DNA of 64,000 nucleotides from positions 248,001 to 312,000 of IMG/VR virus record IMGVR_UViG_3300031669_000001; one strand, written 5' to 3'. The translations under genes were made by a program, and so were the position numbers. Below, in pieces: positions 5,264-52,185 of this stretch. The notes below the pieces were generated by a model that saw only the letters and a program-made list of their open reading frames with translations, was not told the origin of the DNA and did not search any database. The stretch's first letter is position 1; every line of letters begins with the position of its first letter.

Positions 5264-5634
5264 CTACGTTAGATGGACGCTCGAACATTTTGTTAGTGTC
5301 ATCAAATCTTCCAGCGTTGTAAGGGATCCGACTTGAATAGGGCTAAACTGGGAAACAGTCGAATTTATACCTAGTTGCCCATCAACATTCAATCCCCAAC
5401 TCCAAAGAGTTCCATCAGTTTTTAATGCTAATGAATTTGTATAAGCAGCAATTGCTGACCAAGTGATTCCTGATCCTACTTGAGTAGGACTGCTTATATG
5501 AGGCCAGCCAACAGGACCAAGATTTAATCCTAGGTCACCATCTAAGTTATACTCCAAGACCATAGACCACCTACAACAGGACCTAGGCTAGGTTTTACTG
5601 CACTTCCAATCCCTATAAAAAATGAACTAAACAT
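5264..5634 (-). pseudogene. Frameshifted, truncated RCC1/BLIP-II-repeat protein
   Basis: ATG 5634 overlaps the upstream TAA and reads [27 protein letters not shown]. The RCC1 consensus continues (YNLDGDLGLN...DGTLWSWGLNVDGQLG) only after a frameshift at about 5552-5556. Only about 2 repeats remain. Confidence 0.7.
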
Positions 5635-8360
5635 TATGCCACTCCATGTTTGCTTAATCCAAACCATACATGTGTAGAATCTACAACATAGAATGTAAGT
5701 AAGTTAACTGCACTGGCAGTGGTAGACACCGTAGGTATTGTTCCATCATTAGAAATCCAATTGGTGTCAAAGGTTAAGGTCGAAGGTGTTGCATTTTGTG
5801 TGATAGCAATTTGTCCACTTGTCCCAGCTACTGCATTTGTTGGGTTGCTCAATACCTGTGAAGTTGTAGCTTGCAGAGCCAATGAGAAGTTATTCGTTAA
5901 ACTTAAATTCACGGCAACCGCATTTGCTGCAACTGAAAGAGCTGTCACGGCAAACGATTGTGTAGCGGTGAAAGTTTCCACATTTGCGAGATATGCCACA
6001 CCAGCAGGTACTACACCTGTTGGACCTGTTGGGCCTTCAAGACCTGTAGGACCTGTAGGACCTTCTATACCAGCCGGACCTGTAGCTCCATCTGCACCAG
6101 TTGGACCAGTGAGTGAAGGACCGGTAGGACCGTCTAAACCTGTAGGACCGGTAGGACCGTCTAAACCTGTAGGACCGGTAGGACCGTCTAAACCTGTAGG
6201 ACCGGTAGGACCGTCTAAACCTGTAGGACCGGTAGGACCGTCTAAACCAGTAGGACCACCAGCTGGGCCTGTAGCTCCAGTAGGACCAGTTACGAATGAG
6301 TCGGCACCTGTAGGACCTGTAGCACCTTCAAGACCTGTAGGACCAGTTACGAATGAATCTGCACCCGTAGCACCAGTTGGACCAGTGAGTGAAGGACCGG
6401 TAGGACCGTCTAAACCTGTAGGACCGGTAGGACCGTCTAAACCTGTAGGACCACCAGCTGGGCCTGTAGCTCCAGTAGGACCAGTTACGAATGAGTCGGC
6501 ACCTGTAGGACCTGTAGCACCTTCAAGACCTGTAGGACCAGTTACGAATGAATCTGCACCCGTAGCACCAATAGGACCTGTAGGACCTGTAGCACCTTCA
6601 AGACCAGTAGGACCAGTTACGAATGAGTCGGCACCTGTAGGACCTGTAGCACCTTCAAGACCTGTAGGACCAGTTACGAATGAATCTGCACCCGTAGCAC
6701 CAATAGGACCTGTAGGACCTGTAGCACCTTCAAGACCTGTAGGACCAGTTACAAATGAGTCGGCACCAGTTGCACCAGTTGCACCTATAGCTCCAGTAGG
6801 ACCAGTTACGAATGAGTCTGCACCTGTAGGACCTGTTGGACCGTCTAAACCTGTAGGACCTGTAGCACCTTCAAGACCTGTTGGGCCTGTAGGACCACCA
6901 GCTGGACCTGTTGGGCCTTCAAGACCTGTAGGACCTGTAGGGCCACCAAACGCACCTGTAGGACCAACTTCGCCCGTAGGACCCGTAGCACCTTCTAGAC
7001 CAGTAGCTCCAGTAGCTCCAGTAGCGCCAGTGTTACCTAAATTACCTTGAGGACCTGTAGGGCCGGTTACGAATGAGTCTGCACCAGTAGGACCGGTAGG
7101 ACCGCCGAATGGACCTTGAGGACCTGTAGGACCTATCGCGCCAGTAGCGCTGTTAGCACGGATAGTTCCATAAGAAGATGCGCTCCAACCTGTAAAGACA
7201 GATTCTGTGTTCAGATAGATTGTAGTTGGAACAGCCAGAACATATCTCTTTGTTGTCAGAGGAACTTCATAGATTGTAGTGAACGTTGTATTAGTAAAGT
7301 CTTGTGCGTTAGTTTGAAAGTTAAATCCATTGCCTGTACCAATCACCGCGCTTGTAGAATTTGAAGCTCCAGAGAGCGTAGTTACAGATGCACCAGCTGA
7401 AATTGGAGATTCATTTGCAGTACCTGTACCTGTACCGGGACCTGTAGCAACGAAAGTTGTTCCAGATAAACTATCTGTTGCGCCTATCAAAGTAAAATCT
7501 GTATTGCCTGGACTTGCAATTGTGTAAGAATATCCAGTTACAAAAGAACCAGCTGTTACTATTGGAGCAACAAATTGGTAACCTACGAAACCTGAAATAT
7601 CCCACGAACCCGCTGATAGTGAGATGCTTGTAATGTTCGCAGTTAAACCTGATGTCAATGTAACAGGAACAGATATGACAGATTCTACGTAGATACCATC
7701 ACCTGTTGCGCCTGTAGGACCAGTAATTGACAATCCATCTGCACCAGTAGGACCTGTAGGTCCTTCGAGACCCGTAGGACCTGTTACAAAAGAGTCAGCA
7801 CCAGTAGGACCAGTAATAGCTAGACCATCAGGACCTGTAGGACCTGTTACAAAAGAGTCAGCACCAGTAGGACCAGTAGGACCACCAAATGCACCTGTAG
7901 GACCAACATCTCCTGTAGGACCTGTAATCGAAGGACCAGTAGGACCAGTAACTGAAGGACCTGTAGGACCACCAGGTCCTACAAAACCAGATTTGATAGA
8001 ACCATCAAGCTGCATAACTGAGAAGCCGTCTGTGTCAATGTAAGCTAGAGTTTCACTAGATTGAAGAGTTATCTTGCAAAGAACGTATGTGATAGCGTTA
8101 TCGTTGACTTGTAAAGTCACTACGATCGGTGCCGTATCCGCGTTGTAGATAGTGAGAGCTTTTAACTGTCTTTGAGTAGCTGCTGCAGGTGCAGTTACCA
8201 TTGGTTGAGCTATTGTAGAGCCGATGTTTCCATCAGAGCTCAGTGGAGTAAATGTTGTGCTTGTGATGTCAACGTAGCTAGCTGTCCAAGGTATGGAAGC
8301 TCCTGGAAGAGATCCTAAGAAGATCTCAAGAGATTTAGTAGTTGTATCAAAAATGATCAT
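5634..8360 (-). CDS. Collagen-like (Gly-Pro-Thr) tail/whisker fibre protein, 908 aa
   Basis: Two long G-X-Y tracts (GPT, GAT, GLE) separated by globular domains; C-terminal fibre-tip-like domain. Confidence 0.85.
6118..6252. repeat. 27-bp tandem repeat x5 inside the collagen gene
   Basis: ggaccggtaggaccgtctaaacctgta units (encode TGLDGPTGP). Confidence 0.9.
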
Positions 8361-8361
8361 A

Positions 8362-9729
8362 TTAGACTCTCAGTGAAATAAGTGTTAGTACTTGTTGTTG
8401 ATTTGCAGATGACGGTCCTGTAGGTCCTGTTATTGATGGTCCTGCAGGACCTGTAGAACCTGCTGGACCAGTTGGTCCTTCTACATTCGAAGCTGCTCCA
8501 GTAGGTCCCGTTATCGATGGTCCTGTAGCGCCTGTAGGTCCAACTGAACCAACAGGACCGGCGCTTCCAGGTAATCCAGCAACACCTTGAGGACCTGTTG
8601 CGCCTTTTACACCGGCGGGTCCGATAGCGCCAGGCGCACCAACAGGTCCTGTAGGTCCCGCTACACCAGCTCCTGTAGGTCCTGTAATTGATATGCCAGC
8701 GGGACCTGTTGCACCAACCTGTCCAATGGCACCAGCGGGACCTGTAGGACCGTCAACGCTTCTACCGACAGAGTAAGATGCATTCGTTGTCAGTAATACA
8801 GTCTGAGCGCTTAAAATTATAGCAACTTGCTGAGATATTAAGTTAGACGCTAAAGGTGCAGTTTGTGTTAACTCGCCTATAGATCTTGGAGAAGTATCTG
8901 CGTATAAAACTTTACCTTGAGTTAAATCCCAATTCCAATTAGAATTGTAAACTACGCCACCTGTTATTATCTTTGCTGCCTGACCATACGTTAAATTTAC
9001 ATCTACGATACCGATGATAGGGTGTATTAAATCTGCGCCATCTGCTACGCTGATAGTACCTTCACTTTTAACTGAAACACAGTAGAAAGCTGGTATAGAT
9101 TCAGCGGCTATAGACTGAATTTCTAGATCAACAGGAACAGAGTAATTACCTTGATCAACAGCAACAGGTGACGCTGTCGTTAGGAAGTTTCCATTGATCG
9201 TTTTGATTCCCGATCCATCGCTGCCTCGTAGGATGTAACCAGCTGCAACATCATTAGTTGTATCTGGTCCAAGTCCAACTTGAGTTCCCAAAGGTTCAAA
9301 TGTAAAGCTCGATCCACCATTGAAGGAACCTGCAAAGACTCTACACTTTTCTACCCACTGACTTCCACTCCACACCTTCATAATGAATGTGTTTAGATCA
9401 TACCAATGTTGATCTACTGCCGGCGCTGTTGGAGTCACGCTCGATGTTATAGGATCATAAATCGTGTAACTTCTAGTGATGAGACCTGTCGCTAAGTCGA
9501 TATCCCAATAGAGATAGAATGGAGCAGAACCACTGAATGGACCCCAAGCATTTGCAACCGAAGAAACTTCATTGATCAGGTAATTTGCCTGACCGTACGT
9601 AACCGTTACGATGACAGGCGTCGTCGGCGTAGCTAAGATTTGAACGTACGTGCCATTATAGTCAAGGAAAGATGGACTTCCATTAACTATCGGTGCTGTA
9701 ACTATACCTTGCCTGAAATTTAATTTCAT
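8362..9729 (-). CDS. Virion protein with C-terminal collagen-like tract
   Basis: About 120 aa of G-X-Y repeats at the C-terminus; late box upstream; co-transcribed with 5634-8360. Confidence 0.75.
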
Positions 9730-42582: not shown

Positions 42583-43293
42583 TCAGTTAACGATTCGTGA
42601 AGTGTTTGGTTGAAGCGTGTTACGTCTATTTAAACTTCCATCAGAATCCTTGAACCACGTCGTGTACATGATCTGTTGACTCATTGTCTGTAGTTCATTA
42701 AATGCGTGGATTACAACTTCAAGTAACTTTTCAGGAGCTACAAAATTTCCAGATCCATCGTTGACGTCAAGCAAAAGTTTGTGCTTTACCTGGGACTTCT
42801 CAAACGCTCTAATGAAGTCCATCTGTTCTTCATCCTTCTTATCGAAGTTGAATGATAACCCATCGTCCTTGATGAAATCGAAAGATGAAGTGTGAAGAAG
42901 AACCAACAACGTGTTATCCAGAAAAGCTGGATAATTTTGCTCTAAGTTGAAAACGTAATCACCTGAATAACCGCGGTAGCGATGAGAATAAACTGCTTCT
43001 CCGAGGTGAGCCCTGTTCATGATAAATGGAACATCAGTAGACAGCAGCTTCATCATGTCAATGAAAGAAGCTGCTTGATACAGTTTTTGTGCCAAAGATT
43101 TAACGTTTGCCCCATCATAATCATCCGGAACATTCAGGACTTGTCTAGCCTGCTTCACGTAATGATCTAGAATTTCAGGCTTTTGATAATGGATCTCTTG
43201 GAAGAACCCTAAGCGATTTTTGATGCCACTTATGAGCGTGTTCTTTCCAAGGCGATCGATGCCTTCGATTATGATAGAATTTAGCATTGTCAA
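42583..43293 (-). CDS. Thymidylate-kinase-like dNMP kinase
   Basis: IIIEGIDRLGKNT P-loop; IMNRAHLGEAVYS..YRGY. Confidence 0.8.
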   Translation of the reverse strand: MTMLNSIIIEGIDRLGKNTLISGIKNRLGFFQEIHYQKPEILDHYVKQARQVLNVPDDYDGANVKSLAQKLYQAASFIDMMKLLSTDVPFIMNRAHLGEAVYSHRYRGYSGDYVFNLEQNYPAFLDNTLLVLLHTSSFDFIKDDGLSFNFDKKDEEQMDFIRAFEKSQVKHKLLLDVNDGSGNFVAPEKLLEVVIHAFNELQTMSQQIMYTTWFKDSDGSLNRRNTLQPNTSRIVN

Positions 43294-43653
43294 TTACATC
43301 TTTGTGCCAGGGCGTGCAAGCTTGATGTTGGATGTTTGTTCCAGGTAACCATCTTCAACAGCTTTTTCTGCTGGGTAAACGGCAGCTGCACAATTTGTGA
43401 GGTTGATGGTGAACATTCCATCTTGATTTCCGAGAGACCACGGGAAGAAGGCGATAGCCATTTCATTCTTGTTGATCTGTTGTGCAGTGATACCGCGAAC
43501 TTTTTCAATCGTGATGTTGCCTTCTGGTTCCCAAGGACCTTTACCAGTGAATTGATAACCATCTTCTGAACCACCAAGCAGTACCTTTTTGTCTTCAACC
43601 ACGCGACCTAGAATTTCTTCACCACTGTTCAAACGTACGCATACTACTTTCAT
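43294..43653 (-). CDS. Sm-like-fold phage protein
   Basis: VCVRLNSGEEILGRV...FFPW pattern of small beta-barrel proteins in T4-like phages. Confidence 0.55.
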   Translation of the reverse strand: MKVVCVRLNSGEEILGRVVEDKKVLLGGSEDGYQFTGKGPWEPEGNITIEKVRGITAQQINKNEMAIAFFPWSLGNQDGMFTINLTNCAAAVYPAEKAVEDGYLEQTSNIKLARPGTKM

Positions 43654-43686
43654 ATATTTCTCCTGTTATTTGTTTGTTGTATTTTA

Positions 43687-43812
43687 TGTCGGCGCGAGCA
43701 GGATGCCGGTATTCACTTCGCTAATCTCGCGCTGCTCGGGCGTGGCATCTTTTTCCTCGACGATGCGCTGCACATCGCCCTGTGCGTCGCGCACGATGCG
43801 TCCGTAGCCGTG
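43687..43812 (-). pseudogene. glmU: 126-bp internal fragment of a bacterial glmU gene
   Basis: Alternative frame reads [42 protein letters not shown], matching GlmU GYGRI...IVE.KDA..EQ..I.E.NTGI. 80/126 GC; 32/42 codons end in G/C. Confidence 0.9.
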
Positions 43813-44683
43813 ATGTGAGCCAACGCGTAAATTCAAACTCTTGAGGGATAGCTTCGAATTGACAAGCTCTCAAGAACTTAACTTCCGCTGGACCACTGAT
43901 AGGAGGACAAGAAATTTCCTCATAGGGATCTTTTTTGGTAGTTGGTAACGACAGAAAGTTTTCTCTATTTTCGATTGTCGATCCTGTGATCTTCTCAAGA
44001 AGCTCGAAGTGTCGTTCGTAAACGTGAAAAGAATCTGCAGAGTGATGATAGTTACCGTACTTCAACTCTGGATAAAATTCACGCAATGCATTGAGCACCA
44101 TCTCATGAGTAAAACTGAAAGCTGGAGCATCATTTGCCATTCCATAGACAGAATCCTGTGAACGCATCCTAACGCTCATGTTCAGAAAGTTTTCACGAAT
44201 CCTGAAGTTTAGCGCGTATGTACAAGGGACGTCATTAGTGTCGCTAAGAAGATGATCTCTGCTTAGAATCGATATAGAAGCTCTGCGAGAATCTTTGTCA
44301 TTCTTTAACTGATTGACGACGTTGTCAAATTGACTTACGGGAGTATCTCTGAAGATATATTGCCCGTAGTTTGAGTTTATGGATCCATCACGATTGATGA
44401 GATTGCCCCACATCTTTGCAAAGTCTGCTATGGAAGTATCAAACTTGTCACCTTTCAGGTACCAGAGAAATTCTCTCTTGACGTAGTCTAACTTGAAGCC
44501 GCGAGATGCAAAGCTTGTGAATCGGACGAAAGGTGGAAGGTTGTAGGTATAGTTTTCTATTTCAATGGACTTTTGACCTCGAGGAGATACTCTCTTTCCT
44601 CTTGCAATTAAGTCTTCATAGATGTTTCTAAATGTTGATTCGCTACTGACTACATTATCGTTGTGGTGTCCTGCATTTGACAT
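43721..44683 (-). CDS. Thymidylate-synthase-fold enzyme, probable dCMP hydroxymethylase/modifying enzyme
   Basis: DSRRA, DVPCT catalytic Cys, [13 protein letters not shown] (Asp in place of the ThyA Asn), SFHVYERH. The last ~29 aa derive out of frame from the glmU insert. Confidence 0.75.
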
Positions 44684-44839
44684 TATTCATCCCATCCTGG
44701 ATAAGGACCTAGTTTTATTGTTCTTGATTGATTTCCATCTTGCCTATTTTGGTATGTCGGGTATTTGAGGCATTATTTCAGGTGTTCTAAAGCATTCATT
44801 TGAATTTCCTTGATGTCGATCATTTCCATGATTTGATCA

Positions 44840-44868
44840 ATTATAACTTCACTGTAGCAAGAAGTAAA
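44840..44868 (-). promoter_or_regulatory. Early promoter for the ThyA-fold/kinase operon
   Basis: TTTACT-N17-TATAAT. Confidence 0.8.
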
Positions 44869-44880
44869 TTATTCCTACAT

Positions 44881-45984
44881 TTATTTTGACAAAGATTTTG
44901 ATAGATTTTTTGATAATTCATCTTCAATCAATTTAACATTTTTAATCAATCGGGCATCAGTTGGCTCAAATTCAAGTGCTTTTTTTGCCAAAGTCAATGA
45001 TTCTTCTTTAAGACCTAAATTATAAGCTGCTATAGCACAATAATCATAAGGAAAAGAATACCAAGCGGCGGGCTCACAAATATACGACATCGGCTTCTCG
45101 GTGATCTGCAACATTCGTTTCATGGCAAAGTAGAGACCATGCCAATTTTGCATCTGATAGTAAGTTTTTCCAAGGTCTAACCATGGCTCACGTTCACCAA
45201 TAGCTTCAGCGCACGCTTTCAAACCCCAAATTTCAGCTTGCTTAACGTCACCCTTTTCAAGGTAGCATCTAGATAGGAATCTCATAGAAGCGCAACGCTC
45301 AGCATCCCACTTAGCACGTGGAAGAGATAGATGTCGCTTCAATTCATCGATAGCTTTGTCATACTGTTTGTAGTACATGTATTCTCGACCGAGATAGTGA
45401 GAATTTCTGTCATCTTCAGGTTCATCTCTACAACCCATCTCCAATAGAGGTAGGTAACTTCCTCTAGACTTTGTTTTATCAGGATAATGAAAGAGCGTGA
45501 AGTCATGACAGTAAGTTTGAACTTCTTTGATGTCATAGTTGTGAAGAACTTCATGGACAGGTTTTACCCAACGATAACCTTTGCGAGAGTGAATCTTGTC
45601 ATACCAAAAAGTGGTCCCAGGTCTACCATCTGGAAGAGTGTTCCAGACGTATTGATAGCGAAGTCTAGTTGTTTCAGGAGTCCATGCTTTTTCGATCGCA
45701 GCTCTCCAACCTGGTGTAAGAACCTCATCAAGATCGATACAGACGCAGACGTCTACATCTTCTGGAACGAACTGTAATGATGCATTACGAGGAATGTCAA
45801 ACCTCCACGGCTTCATCTCGATCGAGTGAACTATCGCACCTTCATCCCGAAGCATCTGTACTGTGTTGTCTGTTGATCCGGTGTCAGCAACCACGATAAG
45901 GTCAGCTTCATCTTTGATAGAAGCCATGAAGCGCTTTACAAACTTTTCCTCATTCTTACAGATTGTGTAAACTGCTATCTTCAT
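44881..45984 (-). CDS. GT2 glycosyltransferase with TPR-like C-terminus
   Basis: AVYTICKNEE, VVADTGSTD.T, FDIPRN, IDLDE (DxD), VHE; helical TPR-like tail. Confidence 0.9.
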   Translation of the reverse strand: MKIAVYTICKNEEKFVKRFMASIKDEADLIVVADTGSTDNTVQMLRDEGAIVHSIEMKPWRFDIPRNASLQFVPEDVDVCVCIDLDEVLTPGWRAAIEKAWTPETTRLRYQYVWNTLPDGRPGTTFWYDKIHSRKGYRWVKPVHEVLHNYDIKEVQTYCHDFTLFHYPDKTKSRGSYLPLLEMGCRDEPEDDRNSHYLGREYMYYKQYDKAIDELKRHLSLPRAKWDAERCASMRFLSRCYLEKGDVKQAEIWGLKACAEAIGEREPWLDLGKTYYQMQNWHGLYFAMKRMLQITEKPMSYICEPAAWYSFPYDYCAIAAYNLGLKEESLTLAKKALEFEPTDARLIKNVKLIEDELSKNLSKSLSK

Positions 45985-47000
45985 TTTGCTTCCTTTATCT
46001 GCTTTGTAAGTTGATCAAATCTTGTTCCCCAACAACCTGCGTTATATTCGTAGCCGTATGTACGCTCTGTGATCTTTGCTGCACGTTCCATTGTAGCAAC
46101 AGCATCTGATTGTCGACCAGCTTCAAGATAAGTTTGTGCTAGATAAACAACGTATTCACGAACCTTAGGTGCATGCTTGACTACGTTCATCATGTTCATG
46201 ATCGCCGAATCATAATCCTTCTGACGCTTGTTGATTCCAGAGAGTTGATAATGTAGAAAGGCCTTATCAGAATCAGGTAATGTGAGAGCATGCTCAATCG
46301 CTTCTGCCGCTTCTCGATAGAAACCTGCGTTGATATATTCACCTGCTAGAAATGAAAATGTCTTCCAACGCTTCTTATCTTCGATAGCAGACTGTTTAAG
46401 CATCGTAAGATAACTTCCTCTATTCTTTGAGGTGTCTGGTTTTTGAGTCATTTGAATGTCTTTGAGCCACCTAACTTCATCAGGCGTACCATCACACTTA
46501 ACAATATGTTCGTGAACAGGAAGCTTCCACATATAACCATGTCGAGTGTGAATTCTTTCATGCCAATGTTCACTTACATTGCTGTTAGTTGTCTGCCAAT
46601 CCCAGATCGTTCTGAACCTGTGGTGATAACGATCATGTGGTTTACCTCTAGCTGCGATATCTTCCTCAACTGCAGTCTTTAAGATTTGGTACCAACCAGG
46701 CTCCAGCATCTCATCTGCATCAATGGAAACGCAAATATCAACATCACTTGGTAATGACATGAGAGCTGTATTGCGCGCATCGTCGAAACGCCACGGACTA
46801 ACGAATATATTTTTGACGATAAGATTTTTATGTTCTTTGCTTAAATCTGCTAAAATGTCGATTGTCTCATCTTTTGATCCAGTATCACAAATTACGATGG
46901 AATCAGCTTCTTTTATCGATTCATAACAACGTTTTATGAATTCTTTTTCATCTTTGCAGATCATGTAAATGCCTATCTTTACTGTCATTAAATTCTCCAT
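45981..47000 (-). CDS. GT2 glycosyltransferase with TPR-like C-terminus (paralogue)
   Basis: GIYMICKDE, ICDTGSKD.T, WRFDDARN, SIDADE, VHE. Confidence 0.9.
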   Translation of the reverse strand: MENLMTVKIGIYMICKDEKEFIKRCYESIKEADSIVICDTGSKDETIDILADLSKEHKNLIVKNIFVSPWRFDDARNTALMSLPSDVDICVSIDADEMLEPGWYQILKTAVEEDIAARGKPHDRYHHRFRTIWDWQTTNSNVSEHWHERIHTRHGYMWKLPVHEHIVKCDGTPDEVRWLKDIQMTQKPDTSKNRGSYLTMLKQSAIEDKKRWKTFSFLAGEYINAGFYREAAEAIEHALTLPDSDKAFLHYQLSGINKRQKDYDSAIMNMMNVVKHAPKVREYVVYLAQTYLEAGRQSDAVATMERAAKITERTYGYEYNAGCWGTRFDQLTKQIKEAK

Positions 47001-47066: not shown

Positions 47067-51299
<4,233 letters not shown>

Positions 51300-51300
51300 C

Positions 51301-52185
51301 ATGCCATTCTTATCTACTTTCGGCACGGCATCTGTTGGAGGTTTTCGTAAAAATAATTTACTGAAACTTCCTTCAAGTATTACATATTTGATTGTTGCAG
51401 GTGGAGGCGGCGGTGCTAAAGATAATTATTCTGGTGGTAGAGGTGCTGGAGGCGGTGGTGCTGGTGGATTATTGACGGGTGTAACATCCATTTCTCCCGC
51501 TACTTCATACCCTATAACAGTGGGAGCTGGTGGAGCTGGAGCAAATTCTTTAAATGGTTCAAATGGAACGAATTCTGTTTTTAATTCATTCATTGCGATA
51601 GGAGGCGGTGGAGGCGGTGGAGATAATAGTTCAGGAACACCTTACAATGGTTTAGCAGGAGGTTCAGGAGGCGGTGCAAGTCAGGGATCACCAGGTCAAA
51701 CAGGTGGAGCAGGAACAGCTGGTCAAGGAAATGCAGGCGGTAACTCTCCAACAAATTCTCCACCATACTGTGGAGCTGGTGGAGGTGGAGCTGGTGCCGT
51801 TGGATCCAACGGAGGATCATCAATAGGTAATGGAGGTATAGGATTATCGAGTTCTATAAGTGGAGTGTCGACGTACTATGCAGGCGGTGGTGGAAGTAAC
51901 AGCGGTCAAGGCGCAACCCCAGGTACTGGAGGAACCGGCGGAGGAGGAACCGGCGGACTTTATGGCGGTAGTGTAAATGGCATTTCAGGTACTGCAAACA
52001 CTGGTGGAGGCGGTGGAGGTGGAGCTTACGGTGGTAACGGTGGTAACGGTGGTTCAGGCATTGTTATCTTAAGCTTCTCTAATAATAGCTCTTTACCAAC
52101 TAATGTAACAGGATCTCCAACGATAACAAATGTCGGTGGAAATTACATCTACACCTGGACTACTAACGGTTCCATACAATGGTAA
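51301..52185 (+). CDS. Glycine-rich virion protein
   Basis: YLIVAGGGGG...GGGGAGG...GNGGSGIVIL pattern. Confidence 0.75.
   Translation: MPFLSTFGTASVGGFRKNNLLKLPSSITYLIVAGGGGGAKDNYSGGRGAGGGGAGGLLTGVTSISPATSYPITVGAGGAGANSLNGSNGTNSVFNSFIAIGGGGGGGDNSSGTPYNGLAGGSGGGASQGSPGQTGGAGTAGQGNAGGNSPTNSPPYCGAGGGGAGAVGSNGGSSIGNGGIGLSSSISGVSTYYAGGGGSNSGQGATPGTGGTGGGGTGGLYGGSVNGISGTANTGGGGGGGAYGGNGGNGGSGIVILSFSNNSSLPTNVTGSPTITNVGGNYIYTWTTNGSIQW

What the first reader, a model, noticed from the sequence alone, without database searches (positions are those of the whole stretch)
43687..43812. 126-bp piece of a bacterial glmU gene captured at the end of the ThyA-fold gene
Seen: an abrupt 63% GC island in AT-rich DNA. 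In a different frame from the host ORF it encodes 42 aa of GlmU ([42 protein letters not shown]), with 76% of third positions G/C. It appears to have replaced the phage gene's stop (natural end near TRWLTS), adding an Arg-rich out-of-frame tail. Established: GlmU makes UDP-GlcNAc. Inference: illegitimate recombination with chromosomal DNA of a GC-rich, probably betaproteobacterial host, giving a direct host fingerprint. It lies 1 kb from the two GT2 genes, whose donor could be UDP-GlcNAc; this may be coincidence.
Basis: partly seen in the sequence, partly recalled or inferred. Interest (0 to 1): 0.8.

Follow-up and report, generated by a model that had tools for sequence, protein, structure and literature searches.

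The report
Host glmU scrap in jumbo phage
A 345-kb soil phage carries a 123-base piece of its bacterial host's glmU gene, pasted by accident just before the stop codon of a phage gene; it has no evident function, but it points to iron-oxidising Gallionella-type bacteria as the host.

Summary
Window 43688-43810 (123 bp, 64% GC, in flanks of about 40%) is 100% identical to an internal part of a full-length glmU gene (codons 134-173). That gene lies on two bacterial metagenome contigs, one from the same metagenome as the phage contig. Identity stops abruptly at both ends. Two related phage contigs (94-97% and about 82% nt identity) have the empty site: there the ThyA-fold gene ends ...[12 protein letters not shown]. 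The piece sits exactly between the last sense codon and that TAA. The TAA survives but is now out of frame, and the gene gains a 29-aa Arg-rich tail encoded by out-of-frame glmU. Contigs from an independent assembler reach across both junctions, so an assembly chimera is unlikely. The donor GlmU is 91% identical to, and sister of, a Gallionella MAG inside a well-supported Gallionellaceae clade (Betaproteobacteria). No other IMG/VR contig holds the piece, it has no RNA structure, and it encodes no usable protein. It is a recent, probably neutral scar of illegitimate recombination. Its value is as a host marker for an uncultured relative of Ralstonia phage RsoM2USA. The nearness to the GT2 genes is coincidence. 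It is a clean example of a known kind of event.

The parts
43688..43810 (-). Captured host DNA: 123 bp identical to codons 134-173 (plus partial codons) of glmU of a Gallionellaceae bacterium. It is sense-oriented with respect to the phage genes.
   Evidence: 100% over 123 bp to L083 and L084, with unrelated DNA on both sides. X2 Logan contig of 577 bp, depth 297, has 0 differences and host flanks. GlmU match. GC3 0.78.
43684..43687 (-). Right junction. There is one extra A (43687), then the original TAA stop of the ThyA-fold gene (43686-43684). That TAA is now out of frame for the ThyA-fold gene and closes the GlmU-frame ORF. The A-run after it is one A longer than in the empty sites.
   Evidence: Comparison with the empty sites L086 and L088 (...TCA TAA AT...). 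The net gain is 125 nt.
43811..44683 (-). Original ThyA-fold gene (291 codons, ends ...FEFTRWLTS). It is more like (d)CMP 5-hydroxymethylases than thymidylate synthases.
   Evidence: PF00303 73 bits. PDB best matches are MilA and T4 gp42. 64% aa identity to RsoM2USA ORF10. 97% nt identity to L086 up to 43811.
43721..43810 (-). New 3' end of the ThyA-fold ORF. It adds 29 codons of out-of-frame glmU ([29 protein letters not shown]) plus a TAG stop.
   Evidence: ORF 43721-44683. Tail composition. No homologue of 120 listed covers more than 92% of the 320-aa query, and none of the seven C-termini read (P0001-P0006, RsoM2USA) has such a tail.
43684..43836 (-). Mechanical 50-aa ORF in the GlmU frame (TTG start inside the ThyA-fold gene). 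It is probably not a gene.
   Evidence: In the empty-site relatives the same frame closes after about 10 codons (read from the sequence). The start has no properly spaced Shine-Dalgarno sequence (read).
43294..43653 (-). Downstream 119-aa phage gene of unknown function. Its Shine-Dalgarno sequence (AGGAGAA) and start codon are untouched by the insertion.
   Evidence: It is conserved in L086, L088 and L089. No Pfam or PHROG hit.

Best explanation
This is a recent, probably function-less scar of illegitimate (homology-independent) recombination. While the phage replicated in a Gallionellaceae cell, a 123-bp internal piece of the host's chromosomal glmU was joined into the phage genome. It went in exactly between the last sense codon (TCA) and the TAA stop of the phage's ThyA-fold (hydroxymethylase-like) gene.

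Shown: the donor sequence, the empty site, the exact boundaries, and the effect on the reading frames. The ThyA-fold ORF now runs 29 codons into out-of-frame glmU and stops at an internal TAG. The downstream gene keeps its own ribosome-binding site.

Inferred: the break-and-join mechanism. The most likely route is capture of a host DNA fragment as filler during end-joining, or a double template switch at a break. The 'CA' before the TAA is present on both sides of the insert, and there is at most 1 nt of microhomology. A break made by a homing endonuclease, and host fragments made by phage-induced host-DNA breakdown, are plausible sources but are not shown.

The consequence for biology is a host marker: the recombinant had to complete a productive cycle in the donor cell to exist at about 200x depth.
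For: Donor: L083 (Ga0307377) and L084 (Ga0307375, the same metagenome as the phage contig) are 123/123 identical to 43688-43810 and unrelated beyond. In L083 the stretch lies inside a 453-aa glmU next to glmS, katG and ubiB.

Direction: the stretch is orthologous, at 77-88% nt identity, to glmU of many Gallionellaceae MAGs. It has host codon bias, GC3 0.78.

Empty sites: L086 (94-97% nt identity to the window) and L088 (81-83%) both break the alignment at 43811 and 43684 and read TCA TAA AT.

Single event: only this contig in IMG/VR holds two different sub-strings of the piece. About 16 soil, peat and sediment runs hold words of the island but not the phage gene.

Not an artefact: the JGI 345-kb contig and the independent Logan contigs of run X1 agree. 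Record 3 covers 43688-44400. Record 1 covers 43200-43717. Both have 0 differences, at depth about 200.

No sign of function: RNA fold z = -0.64. There are no flanking direct or inverted repeats. Only 40 of 453 GlmU codons are present. Natural C-termini after the conserved WL vary from 2 to 10 aa, so an extension is likely tolerated.
Against: Raw reads could not be examined, because the 2019 runs are held as contigs only. Record 1 reaches 30 letters past the left junction, one short of the tool's own 31-letter bridging rule. The repair mechanism is inferred from one event. No homing endonuclease gene lies next to the site in this phage. Zero substitutions in 123 bp is compatible with recency but does not measure it. 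Neutrality is assumed, not tested: the Arg-rich tail could harm or alter the enzyme.
Confidence: 0.88

Rival explanations
1. Assembly chimera: abundant host reads were threaded into the phage contig by the assembler, and the phage genome has no insert.
For: Host glmU variants are 5-20 times deeper than the phage in the source run (word depth 1179-4258 against about 200). The Logan contigs break inside the island at 43688-43717. The left junction is crossed by only 30 letters.
Against: The piece is internal, with phage DNA on both sides at the exact position of an empty site in relatives. Two assemblers give the same two junctions with 0 differences. Every 31-mer across both junctions must exist in reads for Logan records 1 and 3 to exist. 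No alternative unbroken phage path (joint) was reported. The phage and the host share nothing else, so no graph path could link them by accident.
Confidence: 0.04
2. Selected, functional capture. The insert could be kept because the Arg-rich tail gives the hydroxymethylase-like enzyme a new property. Alternatively, the 123-nt perfect homology or its RNA could act on the host glmU locus or its mRNA, or it could serve as an attP-like site.
For: The insert-bearing genotype is the dominant one, at about 200x, in its sample. The piece is in sense orientation inside a transcribed gene cluster. 123 bp is long enough for RecA-type homologous recombination (established knowledge).
Against: It is absent from both close relatives and from every other IMG/VR contig. 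It is read out of frame. It has no RNA structure. A sense fragment cannot pair with glmU mRNA. Integration through an internal piece of an essential gene would split that gene. The nearest isolate is strictly lytic (PMC8504454). The 40 codons hold neither of the two GlmU domains whole.
Confidence: 0.05
3. The donor is not the productive host. The piece could have come from a non-host bacterium, from free or transduced DNA, or through another mobile element.
For: A single 123-bp match is one line of evidence. Exact-match host prediction gives the right species in only about 40% of benchmark phages (PMC5831537). No CRISPR-spacer or other independent link was available here.
Against: The match is 100% to a strain in the same metagenome, while co-occurring strains differ by 10%. 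The donor population is very abundant where the phage is abundant. The recombinant had to be packaged and to spread. The nearest cultured relative infects another betaproteobacterium. The piece is chromosomal, in the glmUS operon, and not on a mobile element.
Confidence: 0.12

Closest known systems
Illegitimate recombination between phage and host chromosome (as in the formation of lambda gal/bio specialised transducing phages; short-homology-independent class)
   Same: Host chromosomal DNA is joined to phage DNA at sites with no or minimal homology. The result is a viable phage carrying host sequence (established knowledge; junctions shown).
   Different: Here a lytic-type jumbo phage, not an excising prophage, took up a tiny internal gene fragment of 123 bp. 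It is not an adjacent block of genes, and no phage DNA was lost beyond 0-1 nt.
Filler-DNA capture at a double-strand break (end-joining or template-switch repair)
   Same: It is a short piece of unrelated cellular DNA with sharp ends. There are 1-2 extra or duplicated nucleotides at a junction and no repeats or transposition signature.
   Different: The break, the joining enzymes and the source of the fragment are not identified. This is a mechanistic analogy, not a tested membership.
Host-derived sequence used for phage host prediction (exact or near-exact phage-host matches; Edwards et al. 2016, PMC5831537)
   Same: It is a long exact match (123 nt, far above chance length) between a phage and a bacterial genome.
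   Different: The origin of the match is resolved here: donor gene, empty site and direction. It is neither an att site, a spacer, a prophage nor a shared gene.
Auxiliary metabolic genes or morons (complete host genes carried by phages)
   Same: Host-to-phage transfer of a metabolic gene sequence.
   Different: It is not a gene. It holds 40 of 453 codons, is read in the wrong frame and has no start or promoter of its own.
Ralstonia phage RsoM2USA (343.8 kb, lytic; PMC8504454)
   Same: It is the nearest isolated phage. Its ORF10 is 64% identical to the ThyA-fold protein, its genome size is about the same, and the kinase-like gene lies downstream.
   Different: ORF10 ends ...FTKWLNKFEKAE* with no glmU piece. 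Three other genes, including a dCMP deaminase and a GIY-YIG protein, lie between it and the kinase-like gene. Its host is Ralstonia, not Gallionellaceae.

Membership tests
GlmU (bifunctional UDP-GlcNAc diphosphorylase / GlcN-1-P acetyltransferase) gene | Significant sequence match to GlmU | tested here: met
   The 42-aa peptide hits 17 GlmU chains, E 3e-9 to 5e-7, at residues about 138-178. It is 123/123 nt identical to a glmU that passes TIGR01173.
GlmU (bifunctional UDP-GlcNAc diphosphorylase / GlcN-1-P acetyltransferase) gene | Full-length two-domain protein (N-terminal nucleotidyltransferase plus C-terminal left-handed beta-helix acetyltransferase, about 450 aa) in an open frame | tested here: not met
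   Only codons 134-173 are present. The Pfam NTP_transferase hit is 11.6 bits against a cut-off of 21.2. The fragment is read out of frame by the only long ORF. It is a gene fragment, not a glmU gene.
Illegitimate-recombination / filler-DNA insertion | An identical donor sequence exists in its native context elsewhere | tested here: met
   L083 and L084, inside glmU of the glmUS operon.
Illegitimate-recombination / filler-DNA insertion | Empty site in close relatives | tested here: met
   L086 and L088 read TCA TAA AT with nothing between.
Illegitimate-recombination / filler-DNA insertion | Junctions without substantial homology (0 to a few nt) | tested here: met
   Left junction 0 nt. Right junction at most 1 nt (C), with 'CA' repeated.
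Transposable or homing element (IS, MITE, intron, homing-endonuclease cassette) | Terminal inverted repeats, a regular target-site duplication, its own enzyme gene, or multiple copies | tested here: not met
   No terminal repeats. Single copy in the window and in IMG/VR. The sequence is an internal part of an essential host gene.
attP-type site for integration | Core shared with a host site where integration keeps the target gene intact; integrase nearby; conserved among relatives | tested here: not met
   The piece is internal to glmU, so a crossover would split the gene. It is absent from relatives. The nearest isolate is lytic. An integrase was not searched for across the whole genome.
Thymidylate synthase / pyrimidine hydroxymethylase fold (the gene that received the insert) | PF00303 match above the gathering score | tested here: met
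   73.2 bits against 24.3. The best solved relatives are CMP and dCMP hydroxymethylases. Which substrate and reaction it uses was not tested.

The most novel reading that the evidence does not exclude
The insert may be a snapshot of how this phage treats host DNA. In the donor, CCGAC stands immediately before the fragment and CCGAC forms its last five bases. That pattern would fit fragments cut by a sequence-preferring nuclease that degrades unmodified host DNA. The phage has a dCMP-hydroxymethylase-like enzyme, which suggests its own DNA is modified. In this reading the fragment was then captured at a break in a region that is a homing-endonuclease hot spot in relatives. If so, systematic mining of such scraps in jumbo phages could reveal both hosts and nuclease specificities. 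Separately, this would be the first concrete host link of an RsoM2USA-like jumbo phage to iron-oxidising Gallionellaceae.
Probability: 0.1. Interest if true: 0.55.

Novelty: new member of a known kind. Interest (0 to 1): 0.35.

Why it matters
It ties an uncultured 345-kb jumbo phage to a named host lineage, Gallionella-like iron oxidisers that are very abundant in the same soil. The link is direct and physical rather than statistical. To my knowledge no phage has been isolated on this lineage, and a literature search for Gallionella jumbo phages found none.

It is also an unusually complete natural example of host-DNA capture. The donor, the empty site, the base-exact junctions and the effect on a phage gene are all visible. 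That makes it useful as a benchmark for host-prediction methods and for studying end-joining in phage-infected cells.

It does not reveal a new gene, system or mechanism.

Tried and rejected
- Megablast of the locus against GenBank phages found no match. A distant blastn of the island against E. coli genomes also found none, so the donor is not E. coli and E. coli lab contamination is ruled out.
It was repeated with the 50-aa ORF.
- I looked for flanking direct or inverted repeats, a transposon-like signature or CRISPR-like repeats and found only chance-level short matches.
- I looked for RNA structure or a terminator in the insert. The fold z-score is -0.64, and the one terminator-like hairpin is on the antisense strand, at about the shuffle expectation.
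- I looked for other host-like islands in the window. The other GC-rich periodic stretches are collagen-like tail-fibre genes. The host contigs share nothing else with the window.
- I looked for the piece in other viral contigs and found none.
- The idea that the GT2 genes explain a GlmU-related capture is rejected. L088 has both GT2 genes and lacks the insert, and L086 lacks it too.
- Literature searches for the metagenome ids and for Gallionella jumbo phages found nothing relevant.
- The environment of the source sample could not be verified.

Full report
**What the window is.** The window is part of IMGVR_UViG_3300031669_000001 (= Ga0307375_10000004), a 345,069-bp viral contig. Its nearest isolated relative is the lytic jumbo Ralstonia phage RsoM2USA, 343,806 bp. 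That phage's ORF10 is 64% identical to the ThyA-fold protein discussed here (PMC8504454). The window has 44% GC.

**Check of the observation.**
- The island is real. The 100-bp window starting at 43728 has the highest GC of all 64 kb (0.66). The 200-bp flanks have 39% and 41.5% GC.
- On the minus strand, the strand of all neighbouring genes, it encodes a peptide that matches GlmU and nothing else of note. It hits 17 solved GlmU chains with E from 3e-9 to 5e-7, always at residues about 138-178.
- In that frame GC3 is 0.78. This equals the GC3 of the donor's whole glmU (0.78) and is far from the phage gene's 0.41.
- The long phage ORF 43721-44683 reads the same DNA in another frame. This gives a 29-aa tail with 11 Arg and pI 12.

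**The donor.**
- An exact 50-nt sub-string of the island occurs in only three JGI metagenome contigs. One is the phage contig itself. The other two are bacterial contigs of 58% GC. L084 is Ga0307375_10002970, 17 kb, from the same metagenome as the phage. L083 is Ga0307377_10001844, 25.9 kb, from another metagenome.
- Both are 123/123 identical to window 43688-43810, and the sequences are unrelated immediately beyond either end. The two bacterial contigs are 99.86% identical to each other over 1,462 nt.
- In L083 the stretch lies inside a 453-aa ORF that passes the GlmU equivalog model (TIGR01173, 622 bits, cut-off 367). That ORF is followed by glmS, with katG and ubiB nearby. The captured part is residues 134-173 plus partial codons at each end.
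- The donor reads ...LPNPT-GYGRIV...ILLAPT-KLLRGW....

**Independent confirmation from sequencing runs.**
- Words of the island occur in about 20 soil, peat and sediment runs. The adjacent phage gene is found in only four runs.
- In run X2, a 577-nt contig at depth 297 carries the 123 bp with no difference and with glmU flanks. The phage there is at about 3x.
- RNA run X3 carries the same host form.

**Who the donor is.** Among one genome per GTDB species, the best nucleotide matches to the 123 bp are Gallionella and Gallionellaceae MAGs at 86-88.5%. The donor's whole GlmU is 91% identical to that of Gallionella sp. MAG cluster2_bin.147. In a maximum-likelihood tree of 63 GlmU sequences, the donor is sister to that MAG (support 99/91). 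The pair lies within a clade of Gallionella, Sideroxydans and Nitrotoga (99/97). Eighteen of the 80 loci were left out of the tree because no full-length ORF passed my filter. These included partial contigs and the non-proteobacterial hits. Gallionellaceae are Betaproteobacteria in the NCBI taxonomy. No species-level reference exists in the collection.

**The empty site.**
- A homology search with the ThyA-fold protein found a 285-aa protein (P0001), nearly identical to it (listed as 100% over 87% of the query), that ends ...FEFTRWLTS.
- Its contig, L086 (JGI 3300062818), is 94-97% identical to the window in DNA and has the same gene order. Its alignment to the window breaks exactly at 43811 and resumes at 43684.
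- A second, more distant relative, L088 (Logan contig, 81-83% nt identity), has both GT2 genes, the ThyA-fold gene, the 119-aa gene and the kinase-like gene. It breaks at the same two positions.
- Both read ...TGG CTC AC(A/G) TCA TAA AT.... The window reads ...TCA + 123 host nt + A + TAAAAT....
- The net gain is therefore 125 nt: 123 from the host, plus one A at the junction and one extra A in the following A-run.
- The original TAA is still present at 43686-43684. After an insert of 124 nt it is out of frame for the ThyA-fold gene and now closes the GlmU-frame ORF.
- The ThyA-fold frame passes in phase from TCA into the host DNA and stops at a TAG at 43723-43721.
- The downstream 119-aa gene keeps its AGGAGAA ribosome-binding site and its ATG.

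**Junction anatomy.** At the left junction the phage sequence (...CACATCA) and the donor's upstream sequence (...CCCGAC) share nothing. At the right junction the last C of the fragment could equally be the C of the phage's TCA. 'CA' therefore stands before the TAA as it does in the empty site, which amounts to a 1-nt microhomology or a 2-nt duplication. There are no terminal repeats. This is the signature of end-joining or template switching, not of transposition, site-specific recombination or homologous recombination.

**Is it an assembly artefact?** I could not lay raw reads, because the runs are held as Logan contigs. In the source run X1 the phage is at word depth of about 200.
- Contig record 3 (3,568 nt) covers 43688-44400 without a difference. 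It therefore crosses the right junction with the whole island on one side.
- Record 1 (16,363 nt) covers 43200-43717 without a difference. It crosses the left junction by 30 nt, one short of the tool's 31-letter rule.
- The contigs break inside 43688-43717, where a host variant at depth 1,179 shares the 30-mer. That break is what a true repeat between phage and an abundant host should produce.
- No joint skipping the island was reported.
- The JGI assembly and the Logan assembly, built with different methods, agree. The insert also sits exactly at a site that is empty in relatives. A chimera would need junction-spanning k-mers that only a real molecule can supply. I put the artefact at about 4%.

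**Function.** Nothing suggests one.
- The piece is absent from both close relatives and from all other IMG/VR contigs.
- It holds 40 of 453 GlmU codons and is read out of frame.
- The 50-aa ORF in the GlmU frame has no credible start signal. In the relatives that frame closes after about 10 codons.
- The RNA has no unusual structure, z = -0.64. Being in sense orientation, it cannot pair with glmU mRNA.
- The natural C-termini after the conserved F-T-(R/K/S)-W-L motif vary from 2 to 10 residues among homologues (TS, TT, LS, LDR, TNLKNGI, NKFEKAE, TTLNTKQEKT). An extension is therefore probably tolerated, and the insert-bearing genotype is plainly viable at 200x.
- The GT2 genes about 1 kb upstream of the insert are present in L088, which lacks the insert, so that proximity is coincidence.

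**Mechanism (inferred).** Phage DNA and host DNA fragments coexisted in an infected Gallionellaceae cell. A break at the end of the ThyA-fold gene was repaired with a host fragment as filler, or a polymerase switched templates twice. Two observations make this plausible but do not prove it.
- The ThyA-fold protein resembles CMP and dCMP hydroxymethylases (MilA E 2e-20, T4 gp42 E 1e-19) more than thymidylate synthases (best E 1e-11). It keeps an Asp aligned with the Asp of the T4 enzyme's ...GFRND... motif. RsoM2USA also has a separate true Td. The phage may therefore modify its DNA and break down unmodified host DNA, as T4 does (established knowledge for T4; inference here).
- In relatives this gene and its surroundings are loaded with homing-endonuclease elements. 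These include NUMOD3 fusions, an HNH intein, and a GIY-YIG gene in RsoM2USA. Such elements make double-strand breaks.

A post hoc curiosity: in the donor, CCGAC stands just before the fragment and CCGAC forms its last five bases. Such a coincidence occurs at 0.34% of positions in L083.

**Timing and host link.** The insert is 100% identical to one strain in the same soil, while co-occurring strains differ by about 10% (12 of 123). A relative 94-97% identical to this phage lacks it. The capture is therefore younger than that divergence and came from the local population. Because the recombinant had to be packaged and to spread, the donor was very likely a productive host. Exact matches are an accepted host signal, though an imperfect one (PMC5831537). 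Independent evidence such as CRISPR spacers could not be obtained here.

**Verdict.** The host-derived stretch is 123 bp, not 126 bp. The stop codon was displaced rather than replaced. The host is narrowed to Gallionellaceae. The event is of a well-known kind. Its merit is its completeness and the host assignment it gives to an uncultured jumbo phage.

Noticed in passing
window 43811-44683 (-), with 42583-43293 (-) and 44881-47000 (-): The 'ThyA-fold' protein matches CMP/dCMP 5-hydroxymethylases (MilA, T4 gp42) better than thymidylate synthases. It keeps the Asp aligned with the T4 ...GFRND... motif. It sits between a thymidylate-kinase-like gene and two GT2-TPR genes. RsoM2USA has a separate true Td. 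This may be a DNA hypermodification module.
   Followed up: partly
window 5634-8360 (-), 8362-9729 (-), 47067-51299 (+), 51301-52185 (+): The other GC-rich, strongly 3-periodic stretches of the window lie in very large collagen-like tail-fibre genes (PHROG tail fibre / collagen-like minor tail, E down to 1e-104). They are not host-derived islands.
   Followed up: yes
L083 6160-6164 and 6165-6169 region / 6283-6287 (donor contig); window 43688-43692: In the donor, the 5 nt just before the captured fragment (CCGAC) equal the fragment's last 5 nt (CCGAC). Such a coincidence occurs at 0.34% of positions in that contig. It could hint at a sequence-preferring cut or copy start and stop, but it is post hoc and rests on one event.
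   Followed up: partly
P0022, P0112 (relatives of the ThyA-fold protein); L002 5554-5862 and 5098-5517 (RsoM2USA): Relatives of this gene carry NUMOD3-motif N-terminal fusions and an intein with an HNH endonuclease. RsoM2USA has a GIY-YIG gene and a dCMP deaminase between the ThyA-fold and kinase-like genes, where this phage has only a 119-aa unknown gene. The locus is a hot spot for homing elements and gene turnover.
   Followed up: partly
window 43688-43810 as laid in runs X1, X2, X3, X19: There is strong microdiversity of the host glmU in the source soil. One variant, 90% identical, is at word depth 4258, and another is at 1179. The exact-match strain is at 297 in a sibling sample and is also present in an RNA library. 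Pieces of the phage ThyA-fold gene occur in RNA run X19, which could be transcription or DNA carry-over.
   Followed up: no
window 44645-44880 vs L086 1-730: The first 14 or so codons of the ThyA-fold gene and the AT-rich upstream intergenic region (GC down to 22%) are not conserved between the window and L086, although the rest of the gene is 97% identical. A strong promoter-like site (TTTACT-17-TATAAT) lies at 44868-44840.
   Followed up: no
window 43294-43653 (-): The 119-aa gene directly downstream of the insert is conserved in L086, L088 and L089 but has no Pfam or PHROG match. Its function is unknown.
   Followed up: no
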